From positions 186,001 to 250,000 of IMG/VR virus record IMGVR_UViG_3300027771_001853: a DNA stretch of 64,000 nt. One strand, written 5' to 3'. Position numbers and translations under genes: made by a program. How positions within the stretch are numbered: position 1 is the first letter of the stretch; every line of letters starts with the position of its first letter. Below are positions 30,693 to 50,752 of this stretch, piece after piece. The notes beneath the pieces were generated by a model. It ran no database searches. It was not told the DNA's origin and saw nothing but the letters and a program-made list of their open reading frames with translations.

Positions 30693-31682
30693 TTATTTTT
30701 CGTAATACTCTAACCAATATTCAATCATTTCATCTAACATTGTTTCAAATGTGTATTTGTGTTCCCAACCTAACATTTCTTTCGCTCTAGAACAATCACC
30801 TTTTAAGTGTTCTAGTTCTTCTGGTCTTAAAAACCTTTTATCTGTTTTAATATATTTTTCCCAATCTAGTTCTAGTGAGTTAAAAACATACTCAACCAAG
30901 TCTTGGACTGTGTGAGATACCCCTGTGGAACATACAAAGTCATCTGGTGTATCTTGTTGTAACATCAACCACATCGCTTCAACATAGTCTTTCGCGTGTC
31001 CCCAATCTCTACTAGCTTTCATATTACCCAATTTTAACTCATTGGTCAAACCTAATTTAATCTCTACAGCTATTTTAACCACTTTATTTGTTACAAAATT
31101 AGTTCCTCTTCTTGGTGATTCGTGATTGAACAGAATACCATTAGACACAAACATACCGTAAGAGTTTCTATAATTTTTACATATGTTATGTGCGTATACT
31201 TTAGCACAACCATATGGTGAAACTGGGTTTAACGGTGTTGTTTCTCTTTGGTACCCATCACTATCAATACTGTTACCAAACATTTCTGATGATGATGCTT
31301 GATATACCCTAGCCTTAGGACAAACTAATTTAATGGATTCTAGTAAATTTAATGTACCAGCACCTATACTTTCTAAAGTGTATTTTGGTTGGTCAAAACT
31401 TATCCTCACATGTGATTGAGCTGCTAGATTATACACCTCATCTGGTTTTGATTTACCCAATACTTTACATATTGAAGCCATGTCAGTCATGTCAGCATAT
31501 TCTAAATTTAATTTTTTATATATACTATCTGGTATCCTTGCAGTCTGATTCTCAGCTACAGAATTTCTTTTTAACATACCCCAAACTTCGTACCCTTTTT
31601 CTAATAACAACTCTGCTAGATATGAACCATCTTGTCCGTTAATCCCTGTTATTAAAGCTTTTTTCTTATTTGTATCCATCAT
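30693..31682 (-). CDS. gmd: GDP-mannose 4,6-dehydratase (copy A)
   Basis: ITGINGQDGSYL, AAQSHV, QASSSE, SPYGCAK, FNHESPRRG, RDWGHA. Confidence 0.95.
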   Translation of the reverse strand: MMDTNKKKALITGINGQDGSYLAELLLEKGYEVWGMLKRNSVAENQTARIPDSIYKKLNLEYADMTDMASICKVLGKSKPDEVYNLAAQSHVRISFDQPKYTLESIGAGTLNLLESIKLVCPKARVYQASSSEMFGNSIDSDGYQRETTPLNPVSPYGCAKVYAHNICKNYRNSYGMFVSNGILFNHESPRRGTNFVTNKVVKIAVEIKLGLTNELKLGNMKASRDWGHAKDYVEAMWLMLQQDTPDDFVCSTGVSHTVQDLVEYVFNSLELDWEKYIKTDKRFLRPEELEHLKGDCSRAKEMLGWEHKYTFETMLDEMIEYWLEYYEK

Positions 31683-32451
31683 ACTCAAATCTTTTTAAAT
31701 ATTTATCATATATATCCGGTCTTTTATTTATTATATAATCGTCAATCTGTTGACATGTATCGGGTAAAACATTCCCGTCTTTTCCTTGGTGTTCTTTTCT
31801 ATGCCCTGGCCCGGATTGGTACCTAAGTTTATCAGGGTCACCCCCTGTTGCTACACCTAGATGGATACCTACGTACCTATCTAACGATTTCTTTTTGTGG
31901 TCTTTAATATCCTCTACGAAATTATCTATATCTTCTTTATTAAACTTACCACCAAATTGTTTATACCATTCTACTATTTTCAATAATTCTTCTTTTGGGT
32001 TCATTATAAAATCTTCATAATAAACTAATATTTTTGGTCCAAGGTATAAATCATATAACTCTAACATTGCTAAGTAATCCGTATTTTCTTGGTCAGATAA
32101 AGGTAGTCCTTGTAAATCGTTTAATACCAAATTAATCGGTATTGGTTGGTCATCAATTCTACGATGTCTTACAATACATTCTTTATGGTTCCTAACAATT
32201 AAGAAATACCCTTCATTTTCACCAGGGAATGTACCCCAAAAATCAGTACCGTTACCATGTGTTTTATGTATAACAGCCTTTGGGTTGGATTGGGTTATGT
32301 TCGCTCCTCTTTCTTCAGAGTCGTCTGACCCTATAATCACTAAATCTGTTAATCTTTCTATACAATAACATAACCAGTTACTCCCAGAACGTGGATACGA
32401 TGCTATCGTAACTTTTCTATTATTTACTGAATCCTCATAAAATGTCCCCAT
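31666..32451 (-). CDS. Sulfotransferase (Sulfotransfer_1-like)
   Basis: ASYPRSGSNW 5'-PSB loop, KTH, IVRN, YEDF. Confidence 0.75.
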   Translation of the reverse strand: MGTFYEDSVNNRKVTIASYPRSGSNWLCYCIERLTDLVIIGSDDSEERGANITQSNPKAVIHKTHGNGTDFWGTFPGENEGYFLIVRNHKECIVRHRRIDDQPIPINLVLNDLQGLPLSDQENTDYLAMLELYDLYLGPKILVYYEDFIMNPKEELLKIVEWYKQFGGKFNKEDIDNFVEDIKDHKKKSLDRYVGIHLGVATGGDPDKLRYQSGPGHRKEHQGKDGNVLPDTCQQIDDYIINKRPDIYDKYLKRFEYDGYK

Positions 32452-33601
32452 AGTCGTTTATTATTTTACATATTTTATTTATTTCCTCCGTTTTTAAATC
32501 TTGGTGATTTGGTATATAGAACCCAAATTCGTGTAATAAGTCACAGTTTGGTAGTTTTGGCATCTCATAATGTTTTAACCAAAAAGGTTGCCTACCCATA
32601 GAACCAGCTATAAGTGGTCTAACTTCTATCCCTTCTTTGGTCATTACTTCCATAATCTTAGACCTATTCCTATTAACTATAGGATATGCAAAGCTGGATA
32701 TAAAATCAGATTTATCAACCCTTAAGTTAAGCATATTATTATTAATTTTTTTCTTATACAAATCAAAGTTACTTTTTCTAACCACACTAAAGTTATCTAA
32801 TTTATCTAATTGTCTTAACCCTAAAAAAGCCTGTAAGTCTGTAGCTCTAAGGTTAAACCCAGGGTAATAAAAAGTATAAGCTTTATTTTCAGGTGATACG
32901 TCCCATTCATCACTTAATTCTTTAGCGTCTTCTGTGGATAAATCTCTATCCCACCCATGACTTCTTAAAGCTAAAAGAATGTTATATATCTCTTTGTCAT
33001 CTGTGTTTATTAATCCACCCTCAATGGTAGATAAATGGTGTCCGTAATATAAAGAAAAACAAGACATAAGTCCTGCGGTACCTAAATAATCACCTTTAAA
33101 TTTAGACCCCATACTTTCACATGTGTCCTCCAAAAGTGTTACATCATACTTATCACACAGTTCTACTATTTTAGTCATATCAGGTACTAGACCTAACACT
33201 GTAACTAATAATAAACATGTCGGGGTTTCTTTTATGAATAACTCCTCTAAATGCCCTAAATCCACAGATAGGTCTTCCATATTAGAATCACATAGTATTG
33301 GTTGTAAACCTAACTGCATGACAGAAGAAACGTCTGTTACCCAAGATAGTGAAGGTACTATGATTTTATCGTTTTTTAACCTACCACTAGTTTTTAAAGC
33401 GTACAACATTAATAATATAGCTGAGGAACCAGAATTAACAAATACACTGTATTTGGTTCCTAACTTTTTTGCCCATTTTTTTTCAAACTTTACAGTTAAA
33501 GGCCCTTTAGTTAACCTAGGTACCTCATCACCACCTGTTAACCACTCAGCTAAAACAGCCATGTCTTTTTTACTTATAGTATCACCAACTAATTTAGTCA
33601 T
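32435..33601 (-). CDS. colD: DegT-family PLP enzyme, ColD-type GDP-4-keto-6-deoxymannose 3-dehydratase
   Basis: VNSGSSA, EDTCESMG, SLYYGHHLSTIEGG (His in place of Schiff-base Lys), RSHGW, GFNLR; likely start MTKLVGD. Confidence 0.7.
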   Translation of the reverse strand: MTKLVGDTISKKDMAVLAEWLTGGDEVPRLTKGPLTVKFEKKWAKKLGTKYSVFVNSGSSAILLMLYALKTSGRLKNDKIIVPSLSWVTDVSSVMQLGLQPILCDSNMEDLSVDLGHLEELFIKETPTCLLLVTVLGLVPDMTKIVELCDKYDVTLLEDTCESMGSKFKGDYLGTAGLMSCFSLYYGHHLSTIEGGLINTDDKEIYNILLALRSHGWDRDLSTEDAKELSDEWDVSPENKAYTFYYPGFNLRATDLQAFLGLRQLDKLDNFSVVRKSNFDLYKKKINNNMLNLRVDKSDFISSFAYPIVNRNRSKIMEVMTKEGIEVRPLIAGSMGRQPFWLKHYEMPKLPNCDLLHEFGFYIPNHQDLKTEEINKICKIINDYGDIL

Positions 33602-33603
33602 CT

Positions 33604-34728
33604 TTAATTGTTTTTTGTGGTTATAATACAAGGTGAGGTTTTTATCTTATCTAAAAACTTCATGTATATTATTTCAAATCTTTCATCTCTACAAATTAAA
33701 CTAAAAGGAACTAATGGTTCTCCGTGACCATAACTTACCATATCCCATAATTCATATTCTAATTCTACAGTTTTGGTTGTGGTTTTTTCACTACCATTTT
33801 TTAATTCTTTTACGAAGTTTTTAACCCATTTTTTCACATCTCCGTTTGGTTTCCAACCCAACTTATTTTTAATTTTACTTATGTCCGCTAAAGTTGCTTT
33901 TGGTTCTAACCTATCACCTATATATTCTACATGACTATTAGTGTGATGTTCAAATAAAACTGCTAACTCATTTATGGTGACGTTATCAGAGTTCCCAACA
34001 TTATAAACCCCACCATTAAGTTTGTCTGTATGTGTTGCCGATAATAGGTTAGCGTTTACAACATCACCTACATATGTAAAATCCCTTCTCTGTTCCCCAT
34101 CATTTGTTATTGTAATATTTTTACCTTCTTCTACTTGACCTGCCCATATACCCAAAACTGTACAGTATGCCCCTTCTCTTGTCATTCTATCACCATACAC
34201 ATTAAAGTACCTTAAACATACCGTATCTAACCCGTACACATCACTAAACAATTTACAATAGTCTTCACAAATCATCTTTTGTGCTGCATATGGTGACATT
34301 GGGTTTCTAGGTAATTCTTCTGATGTTGGCATTACTTCCGCGTCTCCGTATATTGATGACGAAGACGATAGTACAAATCTTTTTACTTTTGAGTCTGCAC
34401 AAGCTTTCAATAACTTTAGAGTAGCAGTAACATTGTTTTCGTTAAACATTACTGGGTCTTCAATCGAGGGTTGTACTCTTGCCATGGCGGCAAAATGGAA
34501 TACCGCGTCAACATCTTCTAGATATTCACTTATAGTTTCTACTTCGGCTGTAACTAAATCTTGTTCCCAAAAATACGCAGCTGAATTAATATTTTCTCTT
34601 TTACCTGTGGATAGATTATCTATTACGGTAACTTGTACCCCCATATCCACTAACCTATCTACCATATTTGAACCGATAAATCCAGCTCCTCCGGTAACTA
34701 CTGCTTTTTTAATTTTATTTTCTTGCAT
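33604..34728 (-). CDS. NAD-dependent NDP-sugar epimerase/dehydratase
   Basis: TGGAGFIGS, SSSSIYG, YAAQK, LRYFNVYG, RDFTYV. Confidence 0.9.
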   Translation of the reverse strand: MQENKIKKAVVTGGAGFIGSNMVDRLVDMGVQVTVIDNLSTGKRENINSAAYFWEQDLVTAEVETISEYLEDVDAVFHFAAMARVQPSIEDPVMFNENNVTATLKLLKACADSKVKRFVLSSSSSIYGDAEVMPTSEELPRNPMSPYAAQKMICEDYCKLFSDVYGLDTVCLRYFNVYGDRMTREGAYCTVLGIWAGQVEEGKNITITNDGEQRRDFTYVGDVVNANLLSATHTDKLNGGVYNVGNSDNVTINELAVLFEHHTNSHVEYIGDRLEPKATLADISKIKNKLGWKPNGDVKKWVKNFVKELKNGSEKTTTKTVELEYELWDMVSYGHGEPLVPFSLICRDERFEIIYMKFLDKIKTSPCIITTKNN

Positions 34729-35617
34729 AATTATAATTTTTTATAAACCATTCTACGGTTTTTTCTACACCTTCTCTTAATGGTGTGTATTTAAAATCTG
34801 GATTCAACTCGGTAAACTTGGTATTATCACTAGGTTTTCTGAATTGTCCATCTGTCTTATCTGTTTCCCATAAAATATCACCTTTAAAATCCATAACGTC
34901 AACTATTGTCTCAACAAGTTCTTTTATTGAGTATTCGGTAGATGTTGAGGTTATTAGTGGTTCTGGGGAATCGTAGTTATTTAAAGCCCACATAGATATG
35001 TCACCAGCATCTTGTGAGTATAGTAACTCTCTTTGGGGTTTTCCTGTCCCCCAAACTTTCAATGGTGTGTTATTTTTTTTCGCTAGGTAACATTTGTGTA
35101 CTAAAGATGGGACTACGTGACCCTCATCAATCTTAAAATTATCCCTAGGCCCATATATGTTACACGGTACTATAGAAACATAATTCACACCATACTGTTC
35201 TCTATATGTTCTAATCTGTACTTCAGCTAATCTTTTAGAATATGAATACCCTAAACTTGTTGGGTGTGGTTCTCCTGAATGTATCTGGTCGGAAGTTAAT
35301 GGATAGTTTGCGTTCACTGGGAAAATACATGTAGATAATAAACATACTAATTTTTTAACCCCAACTAACCTAGAAACCTCTAGTACATTAGTATTAATCA
35401 TAGTATTCTTATAAAGGAATTCACCTTTTAATTTAGAGTTGATTCCGACACCACCTATTTTTCCAGCACAATGAATCACAGCCTCCGGTGAGTGTTTCTT
35501 AAAAAACGCTAAAGTTTCATCAAAATTAGTTAAATCGCACTCTTTAGAAGCAAATGTGACATCCGCATCTATAGTAGAACCAACCATACCATTACCACCA
35601 GTTACTAATAGTTTCAT
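34715..35617 (-). CDS. fcl: GDP-L-fucose synthase / ColC-like epimerase-reductase
   Basis: TGGNGMVG, GGVG.N, STCIFP, YSYSK, NIYGP.DNF, HVVPSL, WGTGKP.RE. Confidence 0.9.
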   Translation of the reverse strand: MKLLVTGGNGMVGSTIDADVTFASKECDLTNFDETLAFFKKHSPEAVIHCAGKIGGVGINSKLKGEFLYKNTMINTNVLEVSRLVGVKKLVCLLSTCIFPVNANYPLTSDQIHSGEPHPTSLGYSYSKRLAEVQIRTYREQYGVNYVSIVPCNIYGPRDNFKIDEGHVVPSLVHKCYLAKKNNTPLKVWGTGKPQRELLYSQDAGDISMWALNNYDSPEPLITSTSTEYSIKELVETIVDVMDFKGDILWETDKTDGQFRKPSDNTKFTELNPDFKYTPLREGVEKTVEWFIKNYNYARK

Positions 35618-35619
35618 AA

Positions 35620-36597
35620 TTAATTGTTTTTAGAATAATACACCAACCAATAATCAACCATCTCTTCCATTAACATTTTAAATGTGTATTTAGGTTCCCA
35701 ACCCAACTCAGTTCTAATTTTAGTTGAGTCACCCTTTAAGTACGGTAGTTCCTCTGGTCTCATAAATTTAGGATTCTGTTCGATGTAGTCTTCATAATCT
35801 AAATCTAAATATTTAAACACTAGTTCACACATTTCTCTAACAGAGTGTGTCTCCATAGTTGATACTACCCAGTCTCCTGGTTCATCGTGTTGCATCATTA
35901 AATGCATCGCTCTTACATAATCCCAAGAATGTCCCCAGTCTCTAAAAGAGTCCATATTACCCAATTCTAAATTATCTTGTAAACCTAATTTTATTCTTGC
36001 GGCCGCTTTTACGACTTTATTAGTTACAAAATTACTACCCCTCCTAGGTGATTCATGATTAAATAGAATACCGTTAGTTGCGTGTAATTTATAAGCTCTC
36101 CTATAATTCCTAATCATATTATACCCAAAAACTTTTGAGCACCCATATGGGGAAACTGGGTTCATGACCGTTGTCTCTCTTTGGGATTTGTCTTCATCCA
36201 CAGTTAGTCCAAACATTTCTGAACTACTTGCTTGGTAGAATTTTGAATCTGGACAACTTCTTCTATATGCCTCCAACATATTAAGTACACCCATTGCATT
36301 TGTTTGTACTGTAAATTGTGGTATGTCAAAGCTAATTCTTACATGACTTTGAGCAGCTAAATTATATATCTCATCTGGTTGTATTTCATCCAGTAATCTT
36401 TCTATACCACCTTGGTCCAATAAGTCCCCATAGTACGTATGTATTTTATCTTCTAGGTGTACAATCCTTGTATCTTGGTTCTCGGCTGTAGAATTTCTTC
36501 TAACTATCCCATGTACTTCGTAACCTAATTCTAGTAGATACTCCGCTAAGTAACTACCGTCCTGTCCTGCTATTCCTGTTATAAATGCTTTTTTCAT
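35620..36597 (-). CDS. gmd: GDP-mannose 4,6-dehydratase (copy B)
   Basis: ITGIAGQDGSYL, AAQSHV, QASSSE, FNHESPRRG; likely start MKKAFIT at 36597. Confidence 0.95.
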   Translation of the reverse strand: MKKAFITGIAGQDGSYLAEYLLELGYEVHGIVRRNSTAENQDTRIVHLEDKIHTYYGDLLDQGGIERLLDEIQPDEIYNLAAQSHVRISFDIPQFTVQTNAMGVLNMLEAYRRSCPDSKFYQASSSEMFGLTVDEDKSQRETTVMNPVSPYGCSKVFGYNMIRNYRRAYKLHATNGILFNHESPRRGSNFVTNKVVKAAARIKLGLQDNLELGNMDSFRDWGHSWDYVRAMHLMMQHDEPGDWVVSTMETHSVREMCELVFKYLDLDYEDYIEQNPKFMRPEELPYLKGDSTKIRTELGWEPKYTFKMLMEEMVDYWLVYYSKNN

Positions 36598-37181: not shown

Positions 37182-37183
37182 AT

Positions 37184-37753: not shown

Positions 37754-37759
37754 ATTTTA

Positions 37760-38176: not shown

Positions 38177-38192
38177 TTTTATATTTTCAATT

Positions 38193-39056
38193 TTATCTTT
38201 GTGATAGTATAATAGCTAATTCAGCGAATGTACTTCTGTTATCGTATATCCCTATTGTTGTTTCCGCTAATAAGAACATGTCTTCCACAGCTTCTTGTGC
38301 GTGGTCTTTAGTTATGTAGAAATTGTTATGGTTTAACCATGAAACAGTTTCATCTTCTTTAATTATATAATTTTCTTTTTTCCTAAATAAAACGTTGTTA
38401 GGGTAAGAATTAACAATTGTTTTTTCCATTTCTGGGTCTTCAGTGGATATGAAAAACTTCTGGTTAGGGTTTTTTTCTAAATACGGTAACATATTTTTCA
38501 TATAAGCATCAACACTTGAGTCTAGAAAATCAGTACCTCTTGCGTGTATACCAATAACATCTTTAGATAGTCCTAAATCATTTTTAATCTTATCTATATT
38601 ATCTTGTATCGATTTTATGGGTTTTAGTGACCTAATAAAATCATGACTCTTTTCTAAATTTACACCTTCTAAAAAACTTATATTAAAGACTAGAATATTT
38701 TCTTGTTGGTCATCGTGAGTGTATGAATGTTTTCCATCAGCACCATACAAATCAGTAAGATTACGTAATGTATCGTTTTTAAACTCCCAATCTTCCCTAT
38801 CAGCATCATATTTGTTGATGCACATTTTATAATTTTTTAATTCTTTTAACTCTTCTAAACTTATTGTTTGTAATTCATTCTCAAAAAGTTCATCTAGTTT
38901 AGCTAGACAACCATTAGGGATTAGATTGTCCCAGTATATTTTTAATTCCCTATCAGTTTCTTGTGAAATAACATAACAAGATGCTACACATCTTAATCTG
39001 TTCCCTAAACCGCTAGTAACGTATGGTATTATTGTTTTCATATTATCTTGGGTCAT
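38193..39056 (-). CDS. NodZ/O-FucT-like fucosyltransferase (GT-B)
   Basis: SGLGNRL, IGIHARGTDF, FFISTED, A..DM..L, STF. Confidence 0.7.
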   Translation of the reverse strand: MTQDNMKTIIPYVTSGLGNRLRCVASCYVISQETDRELKIYWDNLIPNGCLAKLDELFENELQTISLEELKELKNYKMCINKYDADREDWEFKNDTLRNLTDLYGADGKHSYTHDDQQENILVFNISFLEGVNLEKSHDFIRSLKPIKSIQDNIDKIKNDLGLSKDVIGIHARGTDFLDSSVDAYMKNMLPYLEKNPNQKFFISTEDPEMEKTIVNSYPNNVLFRKKENYIIKEDETVSWLNHNNFYITKDHAQEAVEDMFLLAETTIGIYDNRSTFAELAIILSQR

Positions 39057-39687
39057 ATCCCCATTTTTTAATAAAGTATCTTGTATTATGACCTATTATA
39101 GCATCAGACCTATCACCGTCAGCGTAAATTTCTATTCCGTGGTCAGCTCTAGTAAGTTCCACATCCATTGTAACACTATAGTTATTCTCTTTAATCCTAT
39201 TACCTAAATCTTGGTCTTCATGACCATAATGACCATCAAACTCAGGGTCAAATAACCCTATTTTATCTATTACTGATTTTCTTATACCTAAATTAGCAGT
39301 ACTAAACCAAGAATTAGCACGGGCACCATCAGGGAATTGTACTATTCCCCTACATGCGTCAAAATCTTTTAATGTGTCTAAATGTGACTGTACAAAATCT
39401 CTATAATGTGGTATACAATCATCATCCAATAATATTATGTATGGTGACACACACATCGCTACGGATTCATTAAATCTACCAACCCTATGGTAACCAATAT
39501 CTTCGTTCCAAATATATTTTGTTATAACTTGGAAGTCTGATGGGTTTATTCTGTCCTTACCCCCATCATCATTTATTATCAAATTAAAGTCCATGTTGGT
39601 TTGTTGTGATAAATTGTTAACTATCTGTGTTAACCTATCTGGTCTATTATATGTGGTGATAATTATGTCTATGCTTTTTTCTTTCAT
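39043..39687 (-). CDS. Glycosyltransferase family 2
   Basis: IIITTYNR, NDDG, LLDDD, IGLFD..F.G.YG.ED. Confidence 0.85.
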   Translation of the reverse strand: MKEKSIDIIITTYNRPDRLTQIVNNLSQQTNMDFNLIINDDGGKDRINPSDFQVITKYIWNEDIGYHRVGRFNESVAMCVSPYIILLDDDCIPHYRDFVQSHLDTLKDFDACRGIVQFPDGARANSWFSTANLGIRKSVIDKIGLFDPEFDGHYGHEDQDLGNRIKENNYSVTMDVELTRADHGIEIYADGDRSDAIIGHNTRYFIKKWGYDPR

Positions 39688-39691
39688 ATTT

Positions 39692-39722
39692 AAAATGTAT
39701 TAAAATATTTTAATAAAGTCAC
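39692..39722 (-). promoter_or_regulatory. Putative Bacteroidota-type -33/-7 promoter (weak)
   Basis: GTG-N20-TACATTTT upstream of the 39687 start. Confidence 0.35.
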
Positions 39723-41059
39723 TAAAACCCTATTTTTTCTCCTTCCTTAAATGGGTAGTTGTTATGACTTAGGTAGTCGTGTAAAACAGATTTATAATAT
39801 CTGTTTTTTAATTCTGGTTTTAACCATAAAAATTCTTGTACCACATCCACATCTAAAAATGGGTATCTTGTTTCTATTCCATAGGCTCCAGCCACATATT
39901 CTTCTTTTGCCAAATATGACTCCATACTACTATTAAAAAAACTAGGCCATGGAAAAATACTTGTCAGGTCTTGTGGGTAAAGACCACCAAAGTTACTGTG
40001 ATTGTATTTTTTAACCCCATTAAAACCATAATCTGAAAATAATTCATCTGCTCCCATCCCTGACAACAGAATTTTTTTACCATCACCAATAGCGTAATTA
40101 CATAATAACGATAATGAGTTTGCTCCATTATCATCTATTAATGATAGGTAATATTCGTTATAGTCACTGGAGTTTGAGTATGTAACATACTTAAATTCTT
40201 CTGTGTTTTTTTGGATGTAGTTGTGAGCGTCATTCAATTCTTTAGGGTGTCTGAATAATTCTTGAAATTCTGTATTTTCTTTTAGTTTTAATTTTCTTTG
40301 TTCTATAATGCCCCTATCTTCAGTACCCATTACCGTATAAGATTTAAATGGTACATCTTGTTTTATTAATTCACAAGCGATAGCACCACTATCGTAACCA
40401 CTACTAAGACCAATAAAAATCCTTTCTCTAAGATTGTATGTTCTTTTCTCTATAGATTTTTTAAATGCTTTTCTCCAGTCTTTAAAATCATCTTTATGTT
40501 GATTTAAATCAAATTCTTTAACCTTAAAAGTTTTTATCTCCATCATTAAATCTAAATCAAAAACTTTTGCTGTGTTTGGTTCCATCTTTTGCACATTCTG
40601 GTGACCTAGTCCAGCCAAACCACTACTGTACGACGCACAACCCAAATTACCTAAACCACTAGAATAAAAAATTGGTTTGGTTTTAAATGTGTCTGTGGAG
40701 AATAGGACTTTTCTTTGTTTTAGGTCAACTAATACTATAGCGAACTCACCATCTAATTTTTTAACAAAATCGAACGAGTGTTCTCTATATAATGAAATTA
40801 GGCATTCACCATCAGATTTATAATCACCAAAATCTTTATAGTTGTATATCTCCCCATTATATAGACAAATAACATCATCATCTACGAATGGTTGGGTGGT
40901 AAACTCTCCGGTTATACTTAATAGATTATGTAAAAACATAAGACCCGATAACTTTACAGCATTAGTCTTATCTGGTCCTCTAAATTGTGGGTAAAAATTA
41001 GCTCTACCCAACTGTTCTGGACTTAATTCTTTTTTTGCACTAAATATAAAACTACACAT
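39722..41059 (-). CDS. Asparagine synthetase-like glutamine amidotransferase (glycan amidation type)
   Basis: N-terminal Cys, RGPD, NGEIYN, SSGYDS, SGMGADELF, ETRYPFLD. Confidence 0.85.
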   Translation of the reverse strand: MCSFIFSAKKELSPEQLGRANFYPQFRGPDKTNAVKLSGLMFLHNLLSITGEFTTQPFVDDDVICLYNGEIYNYKDFGDYKSDGECLISLYREHSFDFVKKLDGEFAIVLVDLKQRKVLFSTDTFKTKPIFYSSGLGNLGCASYSSGLAGLGHQNVQKMEPNTAKVFDLDLMMEIKTFKVKEFDLNQHKDDFKDWRKAFKKSIEKRTYNLRERIFIGLSSGYDSGAIACELIKQDVPFKSYTVMGTEDRGIIEQRKLKLKENTEFQELFRHPKELNDAHNYIQKNTEEFKYVTYSNSSDYNEYYLSLIDDNGANSLSLLCNYAIGDGKKILLSGMGADELFSDYGFNGVKKYNHSNFGGLYPQDLTSIFPWPSFFNSSMESYLAKEEYVAGAYGIETRYPFLDVDVVQEFLWLKPELKNRYYKSVLHDYLSHNNYPFKEGEKIGF

Positions 41060-41062
41060 ATC

Positions 41063-41734
41063 TTAAAATTTATAATTTAATAATTCTATCTCCTTCTTAT
41101 AGACATTATATGTTATTTCTCTTGTACGTGGTGTATGTACATCCCTATAATCCACTTTCTTACTTTGGTTTAATGTTGGTAATTCAACATTAGGTAATCC
41201 TACTTTATCTGAAAACTTTTTAAAGTCTTCATTTAGATTTTCATACCTTAATACGTGGTCTACCATTATTTTACCGTCTTCATCTATCAAATAATCGTAT
41301 TGGTTATCGTACCCCCTATTCTGTGTAGCCCAAAATTCTGGACCAGTTTTACCCATATAACCCCTAGTGTAAAATATCTCCATCCACGCCTCAAAACTTC
41401 CAGCACTTTTTACGTGATTATACAGTGGGTGTTGAGGTTTTCCGTCCACTTCAGTACCGTCAGCTAATTCCCATTTTTCAGTACTGTTATTAACATCAAA
41501 CCAGAAACTTTTTTCTGCTATACAATAGTAGTAATTGGATACCATTCTATCCCATGGATTTCTGACCACACAAAAAGAACTACCATCACCCCAAAGTTCA
41601 GGGTTTTCATTTCTCATTTGTTGTGATGTTTGGTGTCCACCCGCTTGTTCCATTTTAAAAGTTTCTTGGATGCTTGTACCAGCATTCTTAGGAATGTGTA
41701 CAAATATTAAATTATTTTCTCTAGATATTGGCAT
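41063..41734 (-). CDS. Sulfotransferase family 2
   Basis: FVHIPKNAGTSI, VRNPWDRMVS.Y, RYENL..DF. Confidence 0.9.
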   Translation of the reverse strand: MPISRENNLIFVHIPKNAGTSIQETFKMEQAGGHQTSQQMRNENPELWGDGSSFCVVRNPWDRMVSNYYYCIAEKSFWFDVNNSTEKWELADGTEVDGKPQHPLYNHVKSAGSFEAWMEIFYTRGYMGKTGPEFWATQNRGYDNQYDYLIDEDGKIMVDHVLRYENLNEDFKKFSDKVGLPNVELPTLNQSKKVDYRDVHTPRTREITYNVYKKEIELLNYKF

Positions 41735-41735
41735 A

Positions 41736-42425
41736 TTAAAATCCTTTATAGTATAGTTGTGGAATTATAGGGTTCTGCCTTAAACCATTGTTAGCAAATC
41801 CTGGTAGTACTTTTACGTCGATATTTAAAGAATTTAAAACAAAGGGTAAACTTATCTGGTCTCTAGAAGAGAACCTACATATAATTTCCCACCATTTTAA
41901 ATTCATGACCTGTATTTGTGGTGTGTTTTTTCTTATACTAGCTGACAACTCAAATAACCCAAAATCTTTAGGAAACCCTTCCTCATTATAGAAGTCCAAC
42001 TGCCTATGAATATTATCTAAACTATCATAGTCACCACCAGGTCCCTCAGTAAGTTCTATTAATGTTTTTGCCTCATCGTAAAGACAGTCTCTTTCTGGGT
42101 GTTTAAATAGTGCTATATCATTATCTTTTAAATAAGTCTCACAAAATTCTTTAGGGTCTGATATAATATCATGTGTGGGGTCCATCCATATATGATAATC
42201 ATAATCTGGTAAAAAAACATGAGGCATTATCTTATATATTTTTGCGTTTCTTCTACCAGTAAATTGTTTATCTATAGTAAAATCAGGTGAAATTATTTGA
42301 TTCCACACTTCACATGGGTGCTCTTTATCTACATAGGCATAATAATCTACACCATGCCATTTTGTTTGTGGTGTTCGTAATTGTTGTACGTTACCAAATA
42401 CGGACGTTATAACTGCTATCTTCAT
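41736..42425 (-). CDS. DUF616 (TOD1/MUCI70) glycosyltransferase-like protein
   Basis: K..PH.FLPDYD..IWMD, HP.R.CLY.EA, WW, RDQISLP. Confidence 0.8.
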   Translation of the reverse strand: MKIAVITSVFGNVQQLRTPQTKWHGVDYYAYVDKEHPCEVWNQIISPDFTIDKQFTGRRNAKIYKIMPHVFLPDYDYHIWMDPTHDIISDPKEFCETYLKDNDIALFKHPERDCLYDEAKTLIELTEGPGGDYDSLDNIHRQLDFYNEEGFPKDFGLFELSASIRKNTPQIQVMNLKWWEIICRFSSRDQISLPFVLNSLNIDVKVLPGFANNGLRQNPIIPQLYYKGF

Positions 42426-43119
42426 TAGGGTGTTTTTTTAATACGTAATTTAATTCATTTATTTTTATTTCCTGTGTAACAATACTGTTTGATACTTGGT
42501 TCCCCCAACCTCTATTTACAACAGTATATTCATTGACTATACCTGGTTCACCAAATACGTCATGTAATTGTTTATAATACTCCACGTCCATTAACCATAT
42601 TAGATTTTCATCAAAATAAGGTTTTTCTTTAAGATTTCTAATAGATATAACACTAGGTGAACTCATAGTATTTTCACCGTATTGAATATTCTTATGGAAC
42701 CTTGGATGGAATGGGCTATGTAGGTTATGGACATCGTCACTTGAATGCTTACAAGCTGACGCTAACCATTTTACCGTTTCGTCTTCAAAACCCTTAACGG
42801 TTTTTTCTATACTAGTTTCATCAATAATAAAATCGTCTTGGAATAGGATTTTTATTATATCTCCAGAAGCGTTCTTCATAGCTACATTACTATTAGCAGA
42901 AGAATTACCTCTATTTTCTAAGTTTTTAACATACTTTATGTCTAATCTTCCGGCCCAATTAACACACAAATCTTTTATGTCGTCATTTTGACTATGGTCA
43001 GATATGACAACCTCTATATCCTTATGTGTTTGCTTTTCAAATAGATTAAAGTTGTATTCTAAAAACTCAACACCTCGTCCATTAGCTTCATATGATGGTA
43101 TACAAATTGATACTTTCAT
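42391..43119 (-). CDS. Glycosyltransferase family 2
   Basis: VSICIPSY, VISD, LFQDD. Confidence 0.85.
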   Translation of the reverse strand: MKVSICIPSYEANGRGVEFLEYNFNLFEKQTHKDIEVVISDHSQNDDIKDLCVNWAGRLDIKYVKNLENRGNSSANSNVAMKNASGDIIKILFQDDFIIDETSIEKTVKGFEDETVKWLASACKHSSDDVHNLHSPFHPRFHKNIQYGENTMSSPSVISIRNLKEKPYFDENLIWLMDVEYYKQLHDVFGEPGIVNEYTVVNRGWGNQVSNSIVTQEIKINELNYVLKKHPNEDSSYNVRIW

Positions 43120-43973
43120 TATAATATTTCTTCCACTTCACCCCTAACTCTTTCCCAAAAATCAGAGTACTTAAAATGTCTTTCATAGTTATCTTCTATT
43201 GCTTCCTTCATAGAATCGTAAGTTTCTGGAGTTAGTTTATTAATTATTTCATATAATTCTGGCCAACTACTAAAAGGTATTATCCCATCAATATTAAAGT
43301 ACTCACCAATATTAGGTGCTCCACAATATAAAGGTATTGTCTTTGACGCGATACAATCCACCAACTTTTCTGTGAACCAATTATCTGTATCACAATTTTC
43401 TACTATAATAGAGAACTGGTACCCATCAAAAATAGGGTCTTTTTTAGGTAGGTAACTCGTAGGTGGGAATAAACGATACTTTAACCCATTAGGTGTTAAT
43501 GTGTCTGGTAGTGATTGTTGGTTCGCTAAATTATTTAACTGTGGTAAAACCTCATATCTAAGTTTATGTCCTGGGAATATCTCCATTCTTTTAGCTCCGG
43601 GTAAAAAAGATAAAGCAAACTCCTTTTTAAATTCATACCCAGAATCCACCCAACACGTACCGAATGGAAATGGTTTAGTGTGTGGTATTTGTTCTAGTAA
43701 AATCGGGTCCCAAGTTAGTATAATATCAAATAGGTCTTGATTTTGTAATAACAAATCATTGGTTGCACTAGTAGGACTCAACCTCCTATATGCTTCTGGT
43801 TCTGTTTGTATATGTATCCTTATATCAGCATCTTTAAAATCCTGATTATTCAAATCCATATGGTCCCAATATATACAAACTTTTTTATTGTATTTAGGGA
43901 AATTTTGGGATGGTTCGTCGCTGCCTCCAATCCCAAATACTCTTGCTTGATGTAAATTTATATTTTCTTCCAT
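43119..43973 (-). CDS. GT10 alpha-1,3/4-fucosyltransferase-like
   Basis: YQFSIIVEN...WFTEKL.DC...TIPLY.G motif. Confidence 0.8.
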   Translation of the reverse strand: MEENINLHQARVFGIGGSDEPSQNFPKYNKKVCIYWDHMDLNNQDFKDADIRIHIQTEPEAYRRLSPTSATNDLLLQNQDLFDIILTWDPILLEQIPHTKPFPFGTCWVDSGYEFKKEFALSFLPGAKRMEIFPGHKLRYEVLPQLNNLANQQSLPDTLTPNGLKYRLFPPTSYLPKKDPIFDGYQFSIIVENCDTDNWFTEKLVDCIASKTIPLYCGAPNIGEYFNIDGIIPFSSWPELYEIINKLTPETYDSMKEAIEDNYERHFKYSDFWERVRGEVEEIL

Positions 43974-44740
43974 GTTTCCGGTACTAAATCTTTAGGGTCT
44001 GGTCCTTGTGGGCCAAACCAGTTATTTGGTGAAACAATAATTTTATCTTTATTGGTATTCAACCACGCTGCCCACCAACTAAAACTACTATTTGCTGTAA
44101 TTTGATGGTTACATATGGACATTAAATGTAAGTCTTCATAATTTTCATTATCACTAACAAAATTAACTTTTTTAATCCCATTTATCTTAGCTAAACTAAA
44201 TAAGTTATTCACACACCACAGAATATCATCAGAAAATACAAATATTTCAATATCTGTTTTTTTTGTTTCATTAACGATATATTCTATCGCTTCTTTATAG
44301 TAGTCCTGATTTGGGGTTGGGTGTATGTTTGGATAATTTAGGTAGTCACCTCTTCTTACATGTAAAGATATTGTATATTCTGAACGAATTATATTAATTT
44401 GGTCTTGTATACCCCTCTTAACATCCTCTGTCACAGTTATAATTTCTTGTACTTTATCTTTAGCGTGTTTAAAGTATTTTTCACTCTGGAAATACCCATT
44501 TATATTCATATCCTTAGTGTATGGTATAGGTGTGTAATGGAAAGGACCTTCACCCTCCTCAACCACAAAACTAATATCTTTTTTTAACCATTCTTTAGGT
44601 ATGTTAAAAAATGGAGCAAACCTATAATCTTCTGGTAATACAACCACATCATTATTTGCCTCAGCAATCCCAATAGCTGTAGCAAGATTAAATAATGAGT
44701 TACCTAACTTAAAATTCTTTATTCCTGTACTTGTTACCAT
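43958..44740 (-). CDS. GT11 alpha-1,2-fucosyl/colitosyltransferase
   Basis: LGN..F, GYFQSEKYF, HVRRGDY, FSDD, ANSSFSWWAAWL. Confidence 0.9.
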   Translation of the reverse strand: MVTSTGIKNFKLGNSLFNLATAIGIAEANNDVVVLPEDYRFAPFFNIPKEWLKKDISFVVEEGEGPFHYTPIPYTKDMNINGYFQSEKYFKHAKDKVQEIITVTEDVKRGIQDQINIIRSEYTISLHVRRGDYLNYPNIHPTPNQDYYKEAIEYIVNETKKTDIEIFVFSDDILWCVNNLFSLAKINGIKKVNFVSDNENYEDLHLMSICNHQITANSSFSWWAAWLNTNKDKIIVSPNNWFGPQGPDPKDLVPETWKKI

Positions 44741-50643: not shown

Positions 50644-50660
50644 ATTTCTTTTATTTGAAC

Positions 50661-50691
50661 AAAAAGTAATGAAAATAATTGGTATGTCAAA
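50661..50691 (-). promoter_or_regulatory. Putative Bacteroidota-type -33/-7 promoter at the start of the glycan island
   Basis: TTTG-N19-TACTTTTT upstream of 50643. Confidence 0.5.
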
Positions 50692-50702
50692 CTTGTGGGC
50701 AT

Positions 50703-50731
50703 AAAAAAAAGCCCCAGAAGGGGCTTTTTTT
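50703..50731. terminator. Rho-independent terminator (bidirectional form) after the major capsid gene
   Basis: A8-GCCCC-AGAA-GGGGC-T7. Confidence 0.85.
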
Positions 50732-50752
50732 ATTAATATATAAAACTTAAGA

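What the first reader, a model, noticed from the sequence alone, without database searches (positions are those of the whole stretch)
31666..44740. Three fucosyltransferase families plus two sulfotransferases: sulfated fucose-type glycan
Seen: adjacent GT11 and GT10 genes next to a GT7-like galactosyltransferase, a NodZ/O-FucT-like enzyme and two sulfotransferase families. No PAPS-synthesis gene is in the window. Inference: the product could resemble Lewis/H-type or sulfated fucan glycans. For a Bacteroidota host this might bait glycan-uptake (SusCD) receptors, or shield the virion from proteases and grazers.
Basis: inference. Interest (0 to 1): 0.6.

Follow-up and report, generated by a model that had tools for sequence, protein, structure and literature searches.

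The report
Phage island for sulfated fucose glycans
A roughly 300-kb marine phage, probably of Bacteroidota, carries about 21 well-conserved genes that make fucose-type sugars, join them into a glycan and sulfate it, most likely to coat its own particle; gene clusters of this general kind are known in phages, but not with sulfation.

Summary
- GT11, the GT7C-type transferase and the Sulfotransfer_2 enzyme pass Pfam cut-offs.
- The GT10-like, NodZ/FUT8-like and SULT-like genes fall just below cut-off, but profile, motif and (for the last two) fold evidence supports them.

No PAPS-synthesis gene exists in the whole 297.6-kb genome, which is 93% complete.

The island runs 30693-47729, plus a conserved GT-B gene at 49411-50808. 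It holds ten probable glycosyltransferases, a methyltransferase and an amidotransferase.

- All 21 proteins (the 20 of the island and the GT-B) lack membrane segments, and the genome has no flippase, polymerase or initiating transferase.
- The 19 island genes covered by a relative at 83-95% protein identity have dN/dS of 0.02-0.13.
- Related phages carry different glycan genes in the same dUTPase-PhoH slot.
- A distant 484-kb phage repeats the Gmd-Fcl-GT11-GT10-sulfotransferase combination.

Best reading: glycan assembly in the cytoplasm, using host GDP-mannose and PAPS, that most likely decorates virion proteins. Giant fibre-like proteins with poly-threonine linkers are candidate acceptors. 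The acceptor is inferred; remodelling of the host envelope remains a serious rival. The receptor-bait idea is untested.

The parts
49411..50808 (-). Divergent GT-B (GT4-like) glycosyltransferase just downstream of the major capsid gene. The real start is probably about 55 codons further in, because homologs are 404-411 aa.
   Evidence: PHROG 7162 'glycosyltransferase', E 9.4e-39. More than 7,900 homologs, the listed ones about 60-65% identical, named glycosyltransferase by JGI and NCBI. Weak Pfam hits in the right order: Glyco_transf_4 in the N-terminal half, Glycos_transf_1 in the C-terminal half.
46383..47729 (-). First gene of the island: Glyco_tranf_2_5 GT-A domain (aa 15-210) followed by an unassigned C-terminal domain of about 240 aa. 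It is kept in the islands of more distant relatives.
   Evidence: PF13712 104.9 bits. Homologs at 45-50% identity in L014, L015, L017 and L025.
45557..46432 (-). Phage-type glycosyltransferase with a GT-A fold. It has no Pfam hit.
   Evidence: Atlas structural matches to viral GT2 and GT7-type clusters, TM 0.84-0.89. It travels with GT11, GT10-like and GT7C in L003-L010.
44742..45560 (-). GT-A glycosyltransferase with the Glyco_transf_7C (galactosyl/GalNAc-transferase type) C-terminal motif.
   Evidence: PF02709 45.4 bits against 23; PF10111 31 bits.
43958..44740 (-). GT11 alpha1,2-fucosyl (or colitosyl) transferase.
   Evidence: PF01531 102.2 bits. HVRRGDY at aa 127-133. 103 phage records carry homologs, mostly cyanophages.
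43119..43973 (-). GT10-like alpha1,3/4-fucosyltransferase.
   Evidence: phmmer to H. pylori FucT 2nzw at 9.9e-6 and 5zoi at 1.2e-5, over the conserved FEN...TEK motif. Pfam is below cut-off.
42391..43119 (-). GT2 glycosyltransferase.
   Evidence: PF00535 45.7 bits. Homologs at 35-47% identity in relatives' islands.
41736..42425 (-). Glycosyltransferase-like protein of the TOD1/MUCI70 family.
   Evidence: PF04765 66.4 bits against 21.4.
41063..41734 (-). PAPS-dependent sulfotransferase of the Sulfotransfer_2 (carbohydrate sulfotransferase) type.
   Evidence: PF03567 53.3 bits, aligned end to end. 5'-PSB motif HIPKNAGTS and 3'-PB motif RNPWDRMVS.
39722..41059 (-). Glutamine-dependent amidotransferase of the asparagine synthase B type. 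Its likely role is amidation of a carboxyl group on a sugar (inferred).
   Evidence: GATase_7 53.9 bits and Asn_synthase 47.3 bits. TIGR01536 127.9 bits, below that model's cut-off.
39043..39687 (-). GT2 glycosyltransferase with a weak Glyco_transf_7C tail.
   Evidence: PF00535 42 bits; PF02709 18.1 bits.
38193..39056 (-). GT23-like (NodZ/FUT8 superfamily) fucosyltransferase.
   Evidence: Profile A1 against PDB: NodZ 7.5e-13, FUT8 1.6e-8. Model pLDDT 93.4 with Foldseek NodZ at 5.8e-11. HARGTD is conserved in the family, with the Arg invariant.
37760..38176 (-). WbuC-like cupin, a family named from O-antigen clusters. Its role is unknown.
   Evidence: TIGR04366 33.7 bits, below the cut-off of 42. 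dN/dS 0.044.
37184..37753 (-). SAM-dependent methyltransferase-like protein, probably for sugar O-methylation (inferred).
   Evidence: PF08241 35.6 bits. dN/dS 0.128.
36594..37217 (-). Half-size DegT-like PLP protein that keeps the Schiff-base lysine. Its function is uncertain.
   Evidence: PF01041 60 bits. Weak match to perosamine synthetase 3bn1 at 7.7e-4, with the lysine aligned. dN/dS 0.078, so not a pseudogene.
35620..36645 (-). GDP-mannose 4,6-dehydratase, copy 2, paired with Fcl.
   Evidence: PF16363 394.5 bits. TIGR01472 383.6 bits.
34715..35617 (-). GDP-L-fucose synthase (GDP-4-keto-6-deoxymannose 3,5-epimerase/4-reductase).
   Evidence: phmmer to human GDP-L-fucose synthase 4e5y at 1e-87 and E. 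coli 1bsv at 4.7e-44. NF047922 220.7 bits.
33604..34728 (-). SDR of the UDP-hexose / UDP-HexNAc 4-epimerase type.
   Evidence: 6dnt at 6e-65, WbgU at 1e-53, WbpP at 4.6e-50. galE model 181.8 bits.
32435..33631 (-). ColD-type GDP-4-keto-6-deoxymannose 3-dehydratase. This is the step that commits the pathway to a 3,6-dideoxyhexose.
   Evidence: E. coli O55 ColD 2gms at 3.6e-60 (207 bits), against perosamine synthase at 1.9e-31. The catalytic His is kept in YYGHHLSTIEGG, aa 195-206.
31666..32451 (-). PAPS-dependent sulfotransferase of the cytosolic SULT (Sulfotransfer_1) fold.
   Evidence: Profile A2 against SULT1B1 at 7.9e-15. 45 of 50 relatives hit PF00685. Model pLDDT 88.5 with Foldseek SULT1B1 at 4.3e-8. 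PSB loop YPRSGSNW, His65 and Arg87 are conserved.
30693..31688 (-). GDP-mannose 4,6-dehydratase, copy 1. It is 57% identical to copy 2 and lies next to the SULT-like and ColD-type genes.
   Evidence: PF16363 396.2 bits. TIGR01472 402.7 bits. Paralogy shown.
47734..48348 (-). dUTPase: the conserved upstream flank of the island slot.
   Evidence: PF00692 94.2 bits. The same flank is present in L014, L015 and L025.
29919..30668 (-). PhoH-like ATPase: the conserved downstream flank of the island slot.
   Evidence: PF02562 195.3 bits. The same flank is present in L015.
1576..15114 (-). Giant 4,512-aa Thr/Pro/Cys-rich protein with seven poly-threonine, mucin-like linkers. It is a candidate O-glycan acceptor, by inference only.
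   Evidence: Thr 14.1%, with linkers such as TTTTTTLPGQ x4 and PPTTTTTTYAI repeats. Weak Lcl_C domain hit.

Best explanation
The finding is the core of a hypervariable glycan-synthesis island in a roughly 300-kb marine phage with T4-type head genes. The island spans window 30693-47729, with a further conserved glycosyltransferase at 49411-50808.

Proposed pathway:
- The host supplies GDP-mannose, UDP-hexoses, PAPS, SAM and glutamine.
- Gmd2 and Fcl make GDP-L-fucose.
- Gmd1 and the ColD-type dehydratase start a colitose-type 3,6-dideoxyhexose.
- The 4-epimerase supplies UDP-Gal or UDP-GalNAc.
- Ten soluble glycosyltransferases assemble a branched hetero-oligosaccharide in the cytoplasm. They include GT11, a GT10-like and a GT23-like enzyme for deoxyhexose caps, plus GT-A enzymes of the GT2 and GT7C types.
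- Two PAPS-dependent sulfotransferases, a methyltransferase and an AsnB-type amidotransferase then tailor it.

What is shown and what is inferred:
- Shown: the family, motif and fold assignments; purifying selection; synteny; and the absence of export and PAPS genes.
- Inferred: the exact sugars and linkages, and the acceptor.

The acceptor I think most likely is one or more phage structural proteins, giving a sulfated, fucosylated glycan coat on the particle. The best candidates are the poly-threonine linkers of the giant fibre-like proteins encoded 15-45 kb away.

Confidence differs by part: about 0.85 for the pathway and its being functional, about 0.45 for the virion as acceptor.
For: Enzyme identities:
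- Searches give the family assignments.
- The weak cases were resolved by profile and fold evidence: NodZ-like; SULT-like.
- One search shows the unannotated 291-aa protein has a GT-A fold.
- Searches support the GT-B gene next to the capsid gene.

Functional and maintained:
- The 19 island genes covered by a relative (83-95% protein identity) have no stops and dN/dS of 0.02-0.13, with dS of 0.4-1.6.
- Stretches identical to the island lie in contigs of marine runs from four different studies that were laid on it; 20 runs from 15 studies hold at least part of it.

Sulfation belongs with fucosylation:
- The 484-kb phage LR756508 has three Sulfotransfer_2-like genes, a GT10-like gene, a SULT-like gene, GT11, Fcl and Gmd within 10 kb, at 22-47% identity.
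- The close relative carries an extra probable sulfotransferase inside the island.

Cytoplasmic assembly with no export route of its own:
- None of the 21 proteins has a credible membrane segment; the single flagged stretch lies inside the soluble ColD-type PLP enzyme.
- No ORF in the genome has more than four hydrophobic segments, so there is no candidate Wzx, Wzy, WaaL, initiating phosphoglycosyl transferase or Gtr-type protein.

Dependence on the host:
- No PAPS-synthesis genes and no sugar-1-phosphate nucleotidyltransferase.

Diversifying slot:
- L014, L015, L017 and L025 keep the dUTPase and/or PhoH flanks and the first GT, but carry other glycan genes, including GT17, an RmlD-like reductase, DUF5672 and a second GT11.

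Pointers to the virion:
- The island lies in a 44-kb co-oriented block that begins with terminase, portal, prohead protease and capsid genes.
- The genome encodes Thr-rich mucin-like linkers in a 4,512-aa protein and its neighbours.

Precedents:
- Giant viruses glycosylate their capsids and fibrils with their own enzymes and encode their own fucose-synthesis enzymes. Some of their clusters include sulfate-metabolism genes (PMC9614988; PMC5408694 and PMC4691112, seen only as listed titles and abstracts).
- Mycobacteriophage capsid and tail glycosylation is cited in PMC12619734.
Against: - No direct evidence identifies the acceptor.
- Bacterial GT11, GT10 and GT2 enzymes are also soluble or peripheral and work on lipid-linked acceptors. 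The lack of membrane segments therefore does not exclude action on host undecaprenyl-linked glycans.
- The cyanophage literature reads similar clusters as cell-wall modification (PMC9602691).
- Runs of 7 or more Thr codons occur only in this genome. They are absent from LR756508, a 518-kb phage and a cyanophage that carry related modules, so the acceptor idea does not generalise.
- The GT-B gene sits next to the capsid gene only in close relatives.
- No RNA run was found, so expression timing is unknown. No enrichment of T4-type late promoters was found.
- No separate ColC-type enzyme is evident, so the dideoxyhexose branch is incomplete on paper.
- The SULT-like enzyme resembles small-molecule sulfotransferases, so its substrate need not be a sugar.
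Confidence: 0.5

Rival explanations
1. The island remodels the host cell envelope during infection. Its soluble enzymes extend or cap host undecaprenyl-linked O-antigen, capsule or O-glycosylation precursors. Host flippases and ligases then export the product. This would change the cell surface, for example to block superinfection or to stop progeny sticking to debris.
For: - This is the usual reading of comparable clusters in T4-like cyanophages. [quoted passage not shown]
- ACG-2014f has a Gmd-SDR-ColD-like-GT11 island.
- GT11 homologs occur in 103 phage records.
- The closest characterised ColD comes from an O-antigen pathway.
- The absence of export genes in the phage is equally expected if host machinery is used.
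Against: - It requires host Wzx, Wzy and ligase to accept a heavily rebuilt, sulfated unit made by about ten foreign transferases.
- No lysogeny context and no Gtr-type genes were found.
- A large, diversifying island is a heavy investment for a transient change in a cell that will lyse.
- The island is embedded among head-morphogenesis genes.
Confidence: 0.3
2. The enzymes make a free or small-molecule product, such as a sulfated oligosaccharide or a sulfated metabolite. Alternatively, the genes are metabolic passengers with no structural role.
For: - The SULT-like protein's nearest solved relatives sulfate small molecules and natural products: SULT1 enzymes, StaL and Teg.
- No acceptor is identified.
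Against: - Strong purifying selection acts on all 19 island genes that could be compared.
- Ten transferases packed tightly with the sugar-nucleotide genes argue for a built glycan.
- The sulfotransferases recur next to fucosyltransferases in a distant phage.
Confidence: 0.1
3. The transferases hypermodify phage DNA with sugars, as T-even phages and some metagenomic phages do on hydroxymethylated bases.
For: - Phage glycosyltransferases that decorate DNA with diverse glycans are known (bioRxiv 10.1101/2023.12.21.572611).
- The island lies next to a dUTPase/dCTP-deaminase-like gene.
Against: - The genome has no thymidylate-synthase-family hydroxymethylase.
- No TET/JBP-type oxygenase was found, although the control for that search was silent, so it is weak evidence.
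- The cited DNA-glycan preprint contains no occurrence of the search stems 'fucos', 'GDP' or 'sulfotransferase' in its main text.
- Fucosyltransferase families, sulfotransferases and GDP-sugar pathways have no known DNA role.
Confidence: 0.03

Closest known systems
Glycan ('LPS / cell-wall modification') gene clusters of T4-like cyanophages, e.g. S-SCSM1 and ACG-2014f
   Same: - A large myovirus-type genome with T4-type head genes.
- Gmd plus GDP-fucose synthase with GT11, NodZ-type and O-FucT-type transferases and several GT2-type genes in one block (PMC9602691).
- ACG-2014f also has a ColD-like gene with the His-His active site next to GT11.
   Different: - Sulfotransferases were not found in those clusters. 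The Sulfotransfer_2 query hit only 3 of 50,697 phage records and the SULT-like query only 1; none of these hits was a cyanophage.
- Here there are also two Gmd paralogs, an amidotransferase and a GT10-like enzyme.
- The host is probably Bacteroidota, not cyanobacteria.
- The product and target are unproven in both cases.
Autonomous glycosylation clusters of giant viruses (chlorovirus PBCV-1; Megavirinae fibril clusters)
   Same: - Virus-encoded sugar-nucleotide enzymes. [quoted passage not shown]
- Glycosyltransferases and methyltransferases that decorate virion proteins.
- Clade-specific, variable clusters.
- Some clusters (Moumouvirus australiensis, Cotonvirus, Tupanvirus) include sulfate-metabolism genes, which suggests sulfated sugars (PMC9614988).
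   Different: - Those are eukaryotic viruses of another realm, and the enzymes are not close relatives.
- There the glycans on capsid or fibrils have been chemically determined; here nothing has been measured.
- At least one of those clusters carries a PAPS-forming enzyme (a SAT/APS kinase in Tupanvirus). This phage has only the transferases and relies on host PAPS.
Mycobacteriophage virion glycosylation
   Same: A phage-encoded glycosyltransferase system that puts glycans on capsid and tail-tube subunits and shields the particle, as summarised in PMC12619734.
   Different: - Judging from one genome announcement that reports two (PMC11256854, listed) and from my own knowledge, few transferases are involved.
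- As far as I know (own knowledge), it includes no sugar-nucleotide pathway, fucosyltransferase families or sulfotransferases.
- The hosts are Actinobacteria.
- The primary paper was not available in the library.
Bacterial O-antigen pathways with colitose and fucose (E. coli O55 ColD; H. pylori Lewis-antigen FucTs)
   Same: - The same enzyme families: Gmd, ColD (207 bits, catalytic His kept), Fcl, GT11 and GT10.
- The same logic of deoxyhexose caps on a Gal/HexNAc backbone.
   Different: - No initiating transferase, flippase, polymerase or ligase, and no ManB/ManC.
- Sulfation, methylation and amidation are added.
- The cluster is carried by a lytic-type jumbo phage next to its head genes.
Moraphages: aquatic jumbo phages of 200-307 kb with predicted Bacteroidota hosts
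   Same: - Genome size, aquatic origin and a DnaK of Bacteroidota type.
- The paper reports four core orthogroups that are glycosyltransferases (PMC12619734).
   Different: - Membership could not be tested, because their sequences are not held here.
- The paper's main text has no occurrence of the search stems 'fucos', 'GDP' or 'sulfotransferase'.

Membership tests
GT11 (alpha1,2-fucosyltransferase family) | Match to the family model above its curated cut-off | tested here: met
   PF01531 102.2 bits against 23.9 for 43958-44740.
GT11 (alpha1,2-fucosyltransferase family) | Conserved HxRRxD donor-binding motif | tested here: met
   HVRRGDY at aa 127-133.
GT11 (alpha1,2-fucosyltransferase family) | Transfers L-fucose from GDP-fucose, rather than colitose or another GDP-sugar | not testable with these tools
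   Both GDP-fucose genes and a ColD-type gene are present. The donor needs an enzyme assay.
GT10 (alpha1,3/4-fucosyltransferase family) | Match to the family model above its curated cut-off | tested here: not met
   PF00852 19.1 bits against 23.9.
GT10 (alpha1,3/4-fucosyltransferase family) | Conserved alpha1,3-FucT motif (F-x-x-x-F/V-E-N ... Y/F-x-T-E-K) and significant similarity to a solved member | tested here: met
   phmmer gives 9.9e-6 to H. pylori FucT 2nzw. FSIIVEN and FTEKLVD lie at aa 187-206. I therefore file it as GT10-like, not as a proven member.
GT23 / NodZ-FUT8 fucosyltransferase superfamily | Sequence-profile similarity to NodZ and FUT8 | tested here: met
   The single sequence is below the Pfam cut-off. 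The family profile gives NodZ 7.5e-13 and FUT8 1.6e-8.
GT23 / NodZ-FUT8 fucosyltransferase superfamily | GT-B-type fold matching NodZ/FUT8, and the conserved Arg of the HxR motif | tested here: met
   Model pLDDT 93.4; Foldseek gives NodZ 5.8e-11 and FUT8 5.3e-10. Arg173 in HARGTD is invariant in 43 relatives.
GT7-type galactosyl/GalNAc transferases | Glyco_transf_7C motif above cut-off | tested here: met
   PF02709 45.4 bits against 23. The N-terminal GT7 domain was not detected, so this is a GT-A enzyme with the 7C motif, not a proven GT7 member.
PAPS-dependent sulfotransferases, Sulfotransfer_2 | Model match above cut-off, with the 5'-phosphosulfate and 3'-phosphate binding motifs | tested here: met
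   PF03567 53.3 bits against 22. HIPKNAGTS and RNPWDRMVS are present.
PAPS-dependent sulfotransferases, Sulfotransfer_1 (SULT fold) | Model match above cut-off | tested here: not met
   PF00685 21.1 bits against 22 for the single sequence.
PAPS-dependent sulfotransferases, Sulfotransfer_1 (SULT fold) | Family-level profile, fold, PSB loop, catalytic His and 3'-PB Arg | tested here: met
   Profile against SULT1B1 at 7.9e-15. 45 of 50 relatives hit PF00685. Foldseek gives 4.3e-8. P20/S22/G23 and H65 are nearly invariant and R87 is invariant.
ColD (GDP-4-keto-6-deoxymannose 3-dehydratase) | Closer to ColD than to the aminotransferases, with His replacing the Schiff-base Lys | tested here: met
   207 bits to 2gms, against 112.6 bits to perosamine synthase. 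The first His of GHH aligns with the residue mutated in the ColD variant 3b8x.
Complete GDP-colitose pathway | A dedicated ColC-type epimerase/reductase in addition to ColD | tested here: inconclusive
   There is only one Fcl-family gene, and it looks like a true GDP-fucose synthase (1e-87 to the human enzyme). The second SDR is of the 4-epimerase type.
Wzx/Wzy- or ABC-type surface polysaccharide locus | Initiating phosphoglycosyl transferase, flippase or transporter, polymerase or ligase | tested here: not met
   No island protein has a credible membrane segment. No ORF in the genome has more than 4 hydrophobic segments.
Gtr-type seroconversion module of temperate phages | GtrA flippase, GtrB bactoprenol transferase and a multi-pass serotype-specific transferase | tested here: not met
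   No multi-pass membrane proteins of that kind were found.
Phage DNA sugar hypermodification | A base hydroxymethylase (ThyS family) or a TET/JBP oxygenase to create the acceptor | tested here: not met
   No PF00303 match. No PF12851 match, but the control for that search was silent, so it is weak evidence.
Virus-encoded virion glycosylation (giant-virus or mycobacteriophage type) | Glycan chemically shown on a virion protein | not testable with these tools
   This needs purified particles. There is only indirect support: soluble enzymes, no export genes, location among head genes, and Thr-rich candidate acceptors.

The most novel reading that the evidence does not exclude
The phage builds a mucin- or fucoidan-like coat: sulfated, fucose- or colitose-capped O-glycans hung on the poly-threonine linkers of its giant fibre proteins. 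It uses this home-made imitation of algal or animal sulfated glycans as an adsorption device. Marine Bacteroidota that hunt such polysaccharides with SusC/D-type binders would capture the virion themselves, or the coat would hold the phage on algal and particle surfaces where those hosts feed.
Probability: 0.08. Interest if true: 0.85.

Novelty: new variant of a known kind. Interest (0 to 1): 0.6.

Why it matters
Sulfated glycans have not, to my knowledge, been shown on any phage product. Here the sulfotransferases are not stray genes. They sit inside a selected, diversifying glycan island, and they recur beside fucosyltransferases in a distantly related huge phage.

If the glycan is on the particle, tailed phages would join giant viruses and mycobacteriophages in making their own coats, with a chemistry (fucose, dideoxyhexose, sulfate) typical of mucins and algal polysaccharides. 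That would bear on several questions:
- how marine phages meet polysaccharide-foraging Bacteroidota;
- how sticky phage particles are, and how fast they decay;
- whether lectins or antibodies can be used to sort uncultured phages.

The work also corrects an annotation habit. The DegT-family gene here and in cyanophage ACG-2014f is a ColD-type dehydratase, not an aminotransferase, so 3,6-dideoxyhexoses may be common in phage glycan islands.

Tried and rejected
- **Megablast of the island against 50,697 phage records:** no match. Only protein-level relatives exist.
- **T4-type late promoter TATAAATA:** 9 sites against 12.9 expected. Sigma-70-like promoters and terminators are at or below shuffle level. 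No timing signal could be read.
- **PAPS genes, ManC, ThyS-family hydroxymethylase, TET/JBP:** all absent from the genome. The TET control rang nowhere, so that one is weak.
- **DNA hypermodification:** rejected for the reasons given under the rival explanations.
- **Pseudogene reading of the half-size DegT and the short methyltransferase:** rejected, with dN/dS of 0.078 and 0.128 and intact frames in the relative.
- **Extra 247-aa ORF in the relative (L031 13553-14296):** no Pfam hit. It has only motif-level and weak BLASTP similarity (2e-4) to the Sulfotransfer_2 gene, so I call it a probable sulfotransferase.
- **Word-index search for the SULT-like protein:** it found 4 relatives and the family scan was below cut-off. 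I therefore used the one exhaustive protein search, which found 574.
- **Do poly-Thr linkers travel with such islands?** Negative at the level of 7 or more consecutive Thr codons in four other phage genomes, against 7 sites here.
- **Is capsid-gene adjacency of the GT-B gene conserved?** Only in close relatives.
- **RNA evidence:** no RNA run holds the stretch.
- **Contigs laid from four marine runs (5,001 letters, within the operators' limit):** they show presence and identical stretches, but no clear structural variant.
- **Operators' conditions:** no alternative genetic code was used. No toxin, effector or animal-virus sequence was involved.

Full report
**Setting.** The window is bases 186001-250000 of a 297,623-bp IMG/VR virus record that CheckV rates 93% complete. 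It carries T4-type head genes:
- major capsid protein, 50753-52591 (Gp23, 243 bits);
- portal, 56216-58066;
- prohead protease, 54204-54929;
- large terminase, 58359-60092;
- a late-sigma-like gene, 26380-27078.

The nearest capsid proteins in the phage collection are only 36-42% identical. They belong to Flavobacterium phage immuto, two uncultured huge phages, a Microcystis phage and Rhodothermus RM378. The genome encodes a DnaK whose 80 best cellular relatives are all Bacteroidota, at 65-69% identity. That candidate set comes from a pattern search, so it is suggestive rather than a phylogeny. Of the 20 runs, from 15 studies, that hold at least part of the island DNA, 9 hold half or more of its sampled words; all are marine, seawater, sediment or sponge metagenomes. 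Contigs with stretches identical to the island are present in runs from four studies, one of which may be the source sample. The size, habitat and chaperone fit the 'moraphage' lineage of aquatic jumbo phages (PMC12619734). I could not test membership.

**Checking the observation.** All genes from 64000 down to 19844 lie on the minus strand and are tightly packed.
- GT11 (43958-44740), the GT7C-type transferase (44742-45560) and the Sulfotransfer_2 protein (41063-41734) pass Pfam cut-offs.
- Three calls were marginal in Pfam, so I tested them further.
  - The GT10-like protein (43119-43973) matches H. pylori alpha1,3-fucosyltransferase at 9.9e-6, exactly over the family's FEN...TEK motif.
  - For the NodZ-like protein (38193-39056), a profile of 43 relatives hits NodZ at 7.5e-13 and FUT8 at 1.6e-8. 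A confident model (pLDDT 93.4) finds NodZ, FUT8, POFUT2 and plant FUT1 as its best folds.
  - For the SULT-like protein (31666-32451), the word search found four relatives and the exhaustive search 574. Their profile hits human SULT1B1 at 7.9e-15, 45 of 50 relatives carry PF00685, and the model matches SULT folds. The phosphosulfate loop, the catalytic His and the 3'-phosphate Arg are conserved.
- The statement about PAPS holds for the whole genome.

The block is a full pathway, not just transferases.
- There are two GDP-mannose 4,6-dehydratases, 57% identical to each other (30693-31688 and 35620-36645).
- There is a GDP-L-fucose synthase (34715-35617; 1e-87 to the human enzyme).
- There is a 4-epimerase-type SDR (33604-34728).
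- The 'DegT' gene at 32435-33631 is not an aminotransferase. It scores 207 bits to E. coli O55 ColD against 113 bits to perosamine synthase. It also has His where aminotransferases have the Schiff-base Lys. That is the signature of the PMP-dependent 3-dehydratase that leads to colitose-type 3,6-dideoxyhexoses.
- Tailoring genes are present: a WbuC-like cupin, a methyltransferase-like protein, a half-size DegT that keeps its lysine, and an AsnB-type amidotransferase.
- The 291-aa protein without a Pfam hit has a GT-A fold.
- The gene beside the capsid gene (49411-50808) is a divergent GT-B transferase with thousands of conserved environmental homologs.

That gives ten probable glycosyltransferases. 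The island proper is 30693-47729.

**Is it functional?** A 62.8-kb contig from another sample carries the same genes in the same order, at 83-95% protein identity over the 19 island genes it covers. For those genes, dN/dS is 0.02-0.13 at dS of 0.4-1.6, with no stops. That relative has one more ORF, with sulfotransferase-type motifs, inserted between the NodZ-like and cupin genes.

**A diversifying slot.** More distant contigs keep the frame but fill it differently.
- L014, L015 and L025 keep the dUTPase upstream flank.
- L015 also keeps PhoH and the next two genes downstream.
- The Glyco_tranf_2_5 gene stays first in all of them.
- The rest of the slot holds other genes, for example GT17, an RmlD-like reductase, DUF5672, DUF3431 and a second GT11.

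GC content in the island matches its surroundings. This is how surface-glycan loci behave.

**Recurrence of the sulfate-fucose link.** Sulfotransferases are rare in the phage collection: the Sulfotransfer_2 query hit three records and the SULT-like query one. The 484-kb uncultured phage LR756508 is among the closest by capsid protein. Within 10 kb it has three Sulfotransfer_2-like genes, a GT10-like gene, a SULT-like gene, GT11, Fcl and Gmd, at 22-47% identity. Association of the same functions at that distance argues that sulfation acts on the fucosylated product.

**Where does the glycan go?**
- None of the 21 proteins has a credible membrane segment.
- The genome has no ORF resembling a flippase, polymerase, ligase, initiating phosphoglycosyl transferase or Gtr protein.
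- It has no nucleotidyltransferase to make GDP-mannose.

Assembly is therefore cytoplasmic and fed by the host. Two destinations fit.

*Phage structural proteins.* This is what happens in chloroviruses, mimiviruses and mycobacteriophages (PMC9614988; PMC5408694 and PMC4691112 as listed; PMC12619734).
- The island sits in a 44-kb co-oriented block headed by the head genes.
- The genome has an unusual set of candidate acceptors. The 4,512-aa ORF at 1576-15114 is 14% Thr, 8% Pro and 5% Cys. It holds seven mucin-like linkers such as TTTTTTLPGQ x4, and neighbouring large ORFs have similar linkers.

*Host lipid-linked glycans.* This is what is usually assumed for cyanophage clusters (PMC9602691).
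- Bacterial members of these families do act on such acceptors, so it cannot be dismissed.
- It would require host export machinery to accept a very foreign, sulfated unit.

I put the virion at about 0.45 and the host envelope at about 0.3. DNA modification is unlikely, because no base hydroxymethylase was found.

**Limits.**
- The poly-Thr idea did not generalise. Runs of seven or more Thr codons are absent from four other phage genomes with related modules.
- The GT-B gene is next to the capsid gene only in close relatives.
- No RNA data exist, and no promoter signal could be read.
- No separate ColC-type enzyme is evident, so completion of the dideoxyhexose is inferred.
- Linkages, donor choice of each 'fucosyl' transferase and the sulfation sites cannot be read from sequence.

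**Comparison and novelty.**
- Gmd-Fcl with GT11, NodZ-type and O-FucT-type genes is already described in a T4-like cyanophage (PMC9602691).
- I found a ColD-like gene with the His-His site next to GT11 in cyanophage ACG-2014f, where it is annotated 'hypothetical protein' or 'aminotransferase'.
- GT11 homologs occur in 103 phage records.

The kind is therefore known. The new elements are these:
- the pairing with two sulfotransferase families, seen in three phage genomes;
- the amidotransferase, methyltransferase and dual-Gmd layout;
- a probable Bacteroidota host;
- the mucin-like candidate acceptors.

None of the 20 jumbo- and huge-phage papers listed by my search contains the word sulfotransferase. 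Giant-virus clusters with sulfate-metabolism genes are the nearest parallel. I rate this a new variant of a known kind, with interest 0.6.

**Housekeeping.** The reads tool was given 5,001 letters. Only genetic code 11 was used. The exhaustive protein search was used once, for the SULT-like protein, because the word search and the family scan had left it open.

Noticed in passing
window 1576-15114 (-), with neighbours at window 2-1540, 16036-17235 and genome 173497-179627: A 4,512-aa ORF with 14% Thr, 8% Pro and 5% Cys. It has seven poly-threonine mucin-like linkers and a weak Lcl_C domain. Adjacent large ORFs carry similar linkers. All seven runs of 7 or more Thr codons in the genome lie in this block.
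   Followed up: partly
window 49411-50808 (-): The gene beside the capsid gene is a divergent GT-B glycosyltransferase. It has more than 7,900 environmental homologs, the listed ones about 60-65% identical, so it is far more conserved than the island enzymes. The listed ORF start is probably about 55 codons too far upstream.
   Followed up: partly
L031 13553-14296 (+), the relative at 83-95% protein identity: An extra 247-aa ORF lies between the NodZ-like and cupin genes. It has YPKTAGT and RNPWD motifs, so it is a probable third sulfotransferase that the window's phage lacks. One sediment-run contig diverges exactly at this junction (window 38194).
   Followed up: partly
L117 (LR756508.1, 312-322 kb): A 484-kb uncultured phage carries three tandem Sulfotransfer_2-like genes, a GT10-like gene, a SULT-like gene, GT11, Fcl and Gmd within 10 kb.
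   Followed up: partly
L118 8968-10161 (Synechococcus phage ACG-2014f, KJ019098.1): A gene annotated 'hypothetical protein' (or 'aminotransferase' in RefSeq) has the ColD-type His-His active site. It sits between an SDR and GT11, downstream of Gmd, which suggests 3,6-dideoxyhexose synthesis in cyanophages.
   Followed up: partly
L011 (518,809-bp viral contig with terminal repeats): A 20-kb stretch holds three Fcl-family genes, two GT10-like genes, GT11 and a ColD-like gene (52% identical). This is another large phage glycan island.
   Followed up: no
genome 252213-253988 (-), just beyond the window's end: A full-length DnaK (859 bits). The 80 best cellular relatives found are all Bacteroidota, at 65-69% identity.
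   Followed up: partly
window 26380-27078 (-): A late-sigma-like protein: PHROG 234 at 4.7e-4 and a weak Sigma70_r2 hit. The T4 late-promoter motif is nevertheless not enriched in the window.
   Followed up: partly
window 17286-19826 (+): A block of five plus-strand ORFs interrupts the long minus-strand run. One of them (18736-19116) has a WYL domain.
   Followed up: no
window 50753-52591 (-): The capsid protein is 612 aa. The best Gp23-model match covers aa 344-597, so much of the N-terminal half has no clear model match.
   Followed up: no
genome 22835-23023 and 87953-88867: A further GT2-type ORF (407 aa) and another SDR-family ORF lie far from the island.
   Followed up: no
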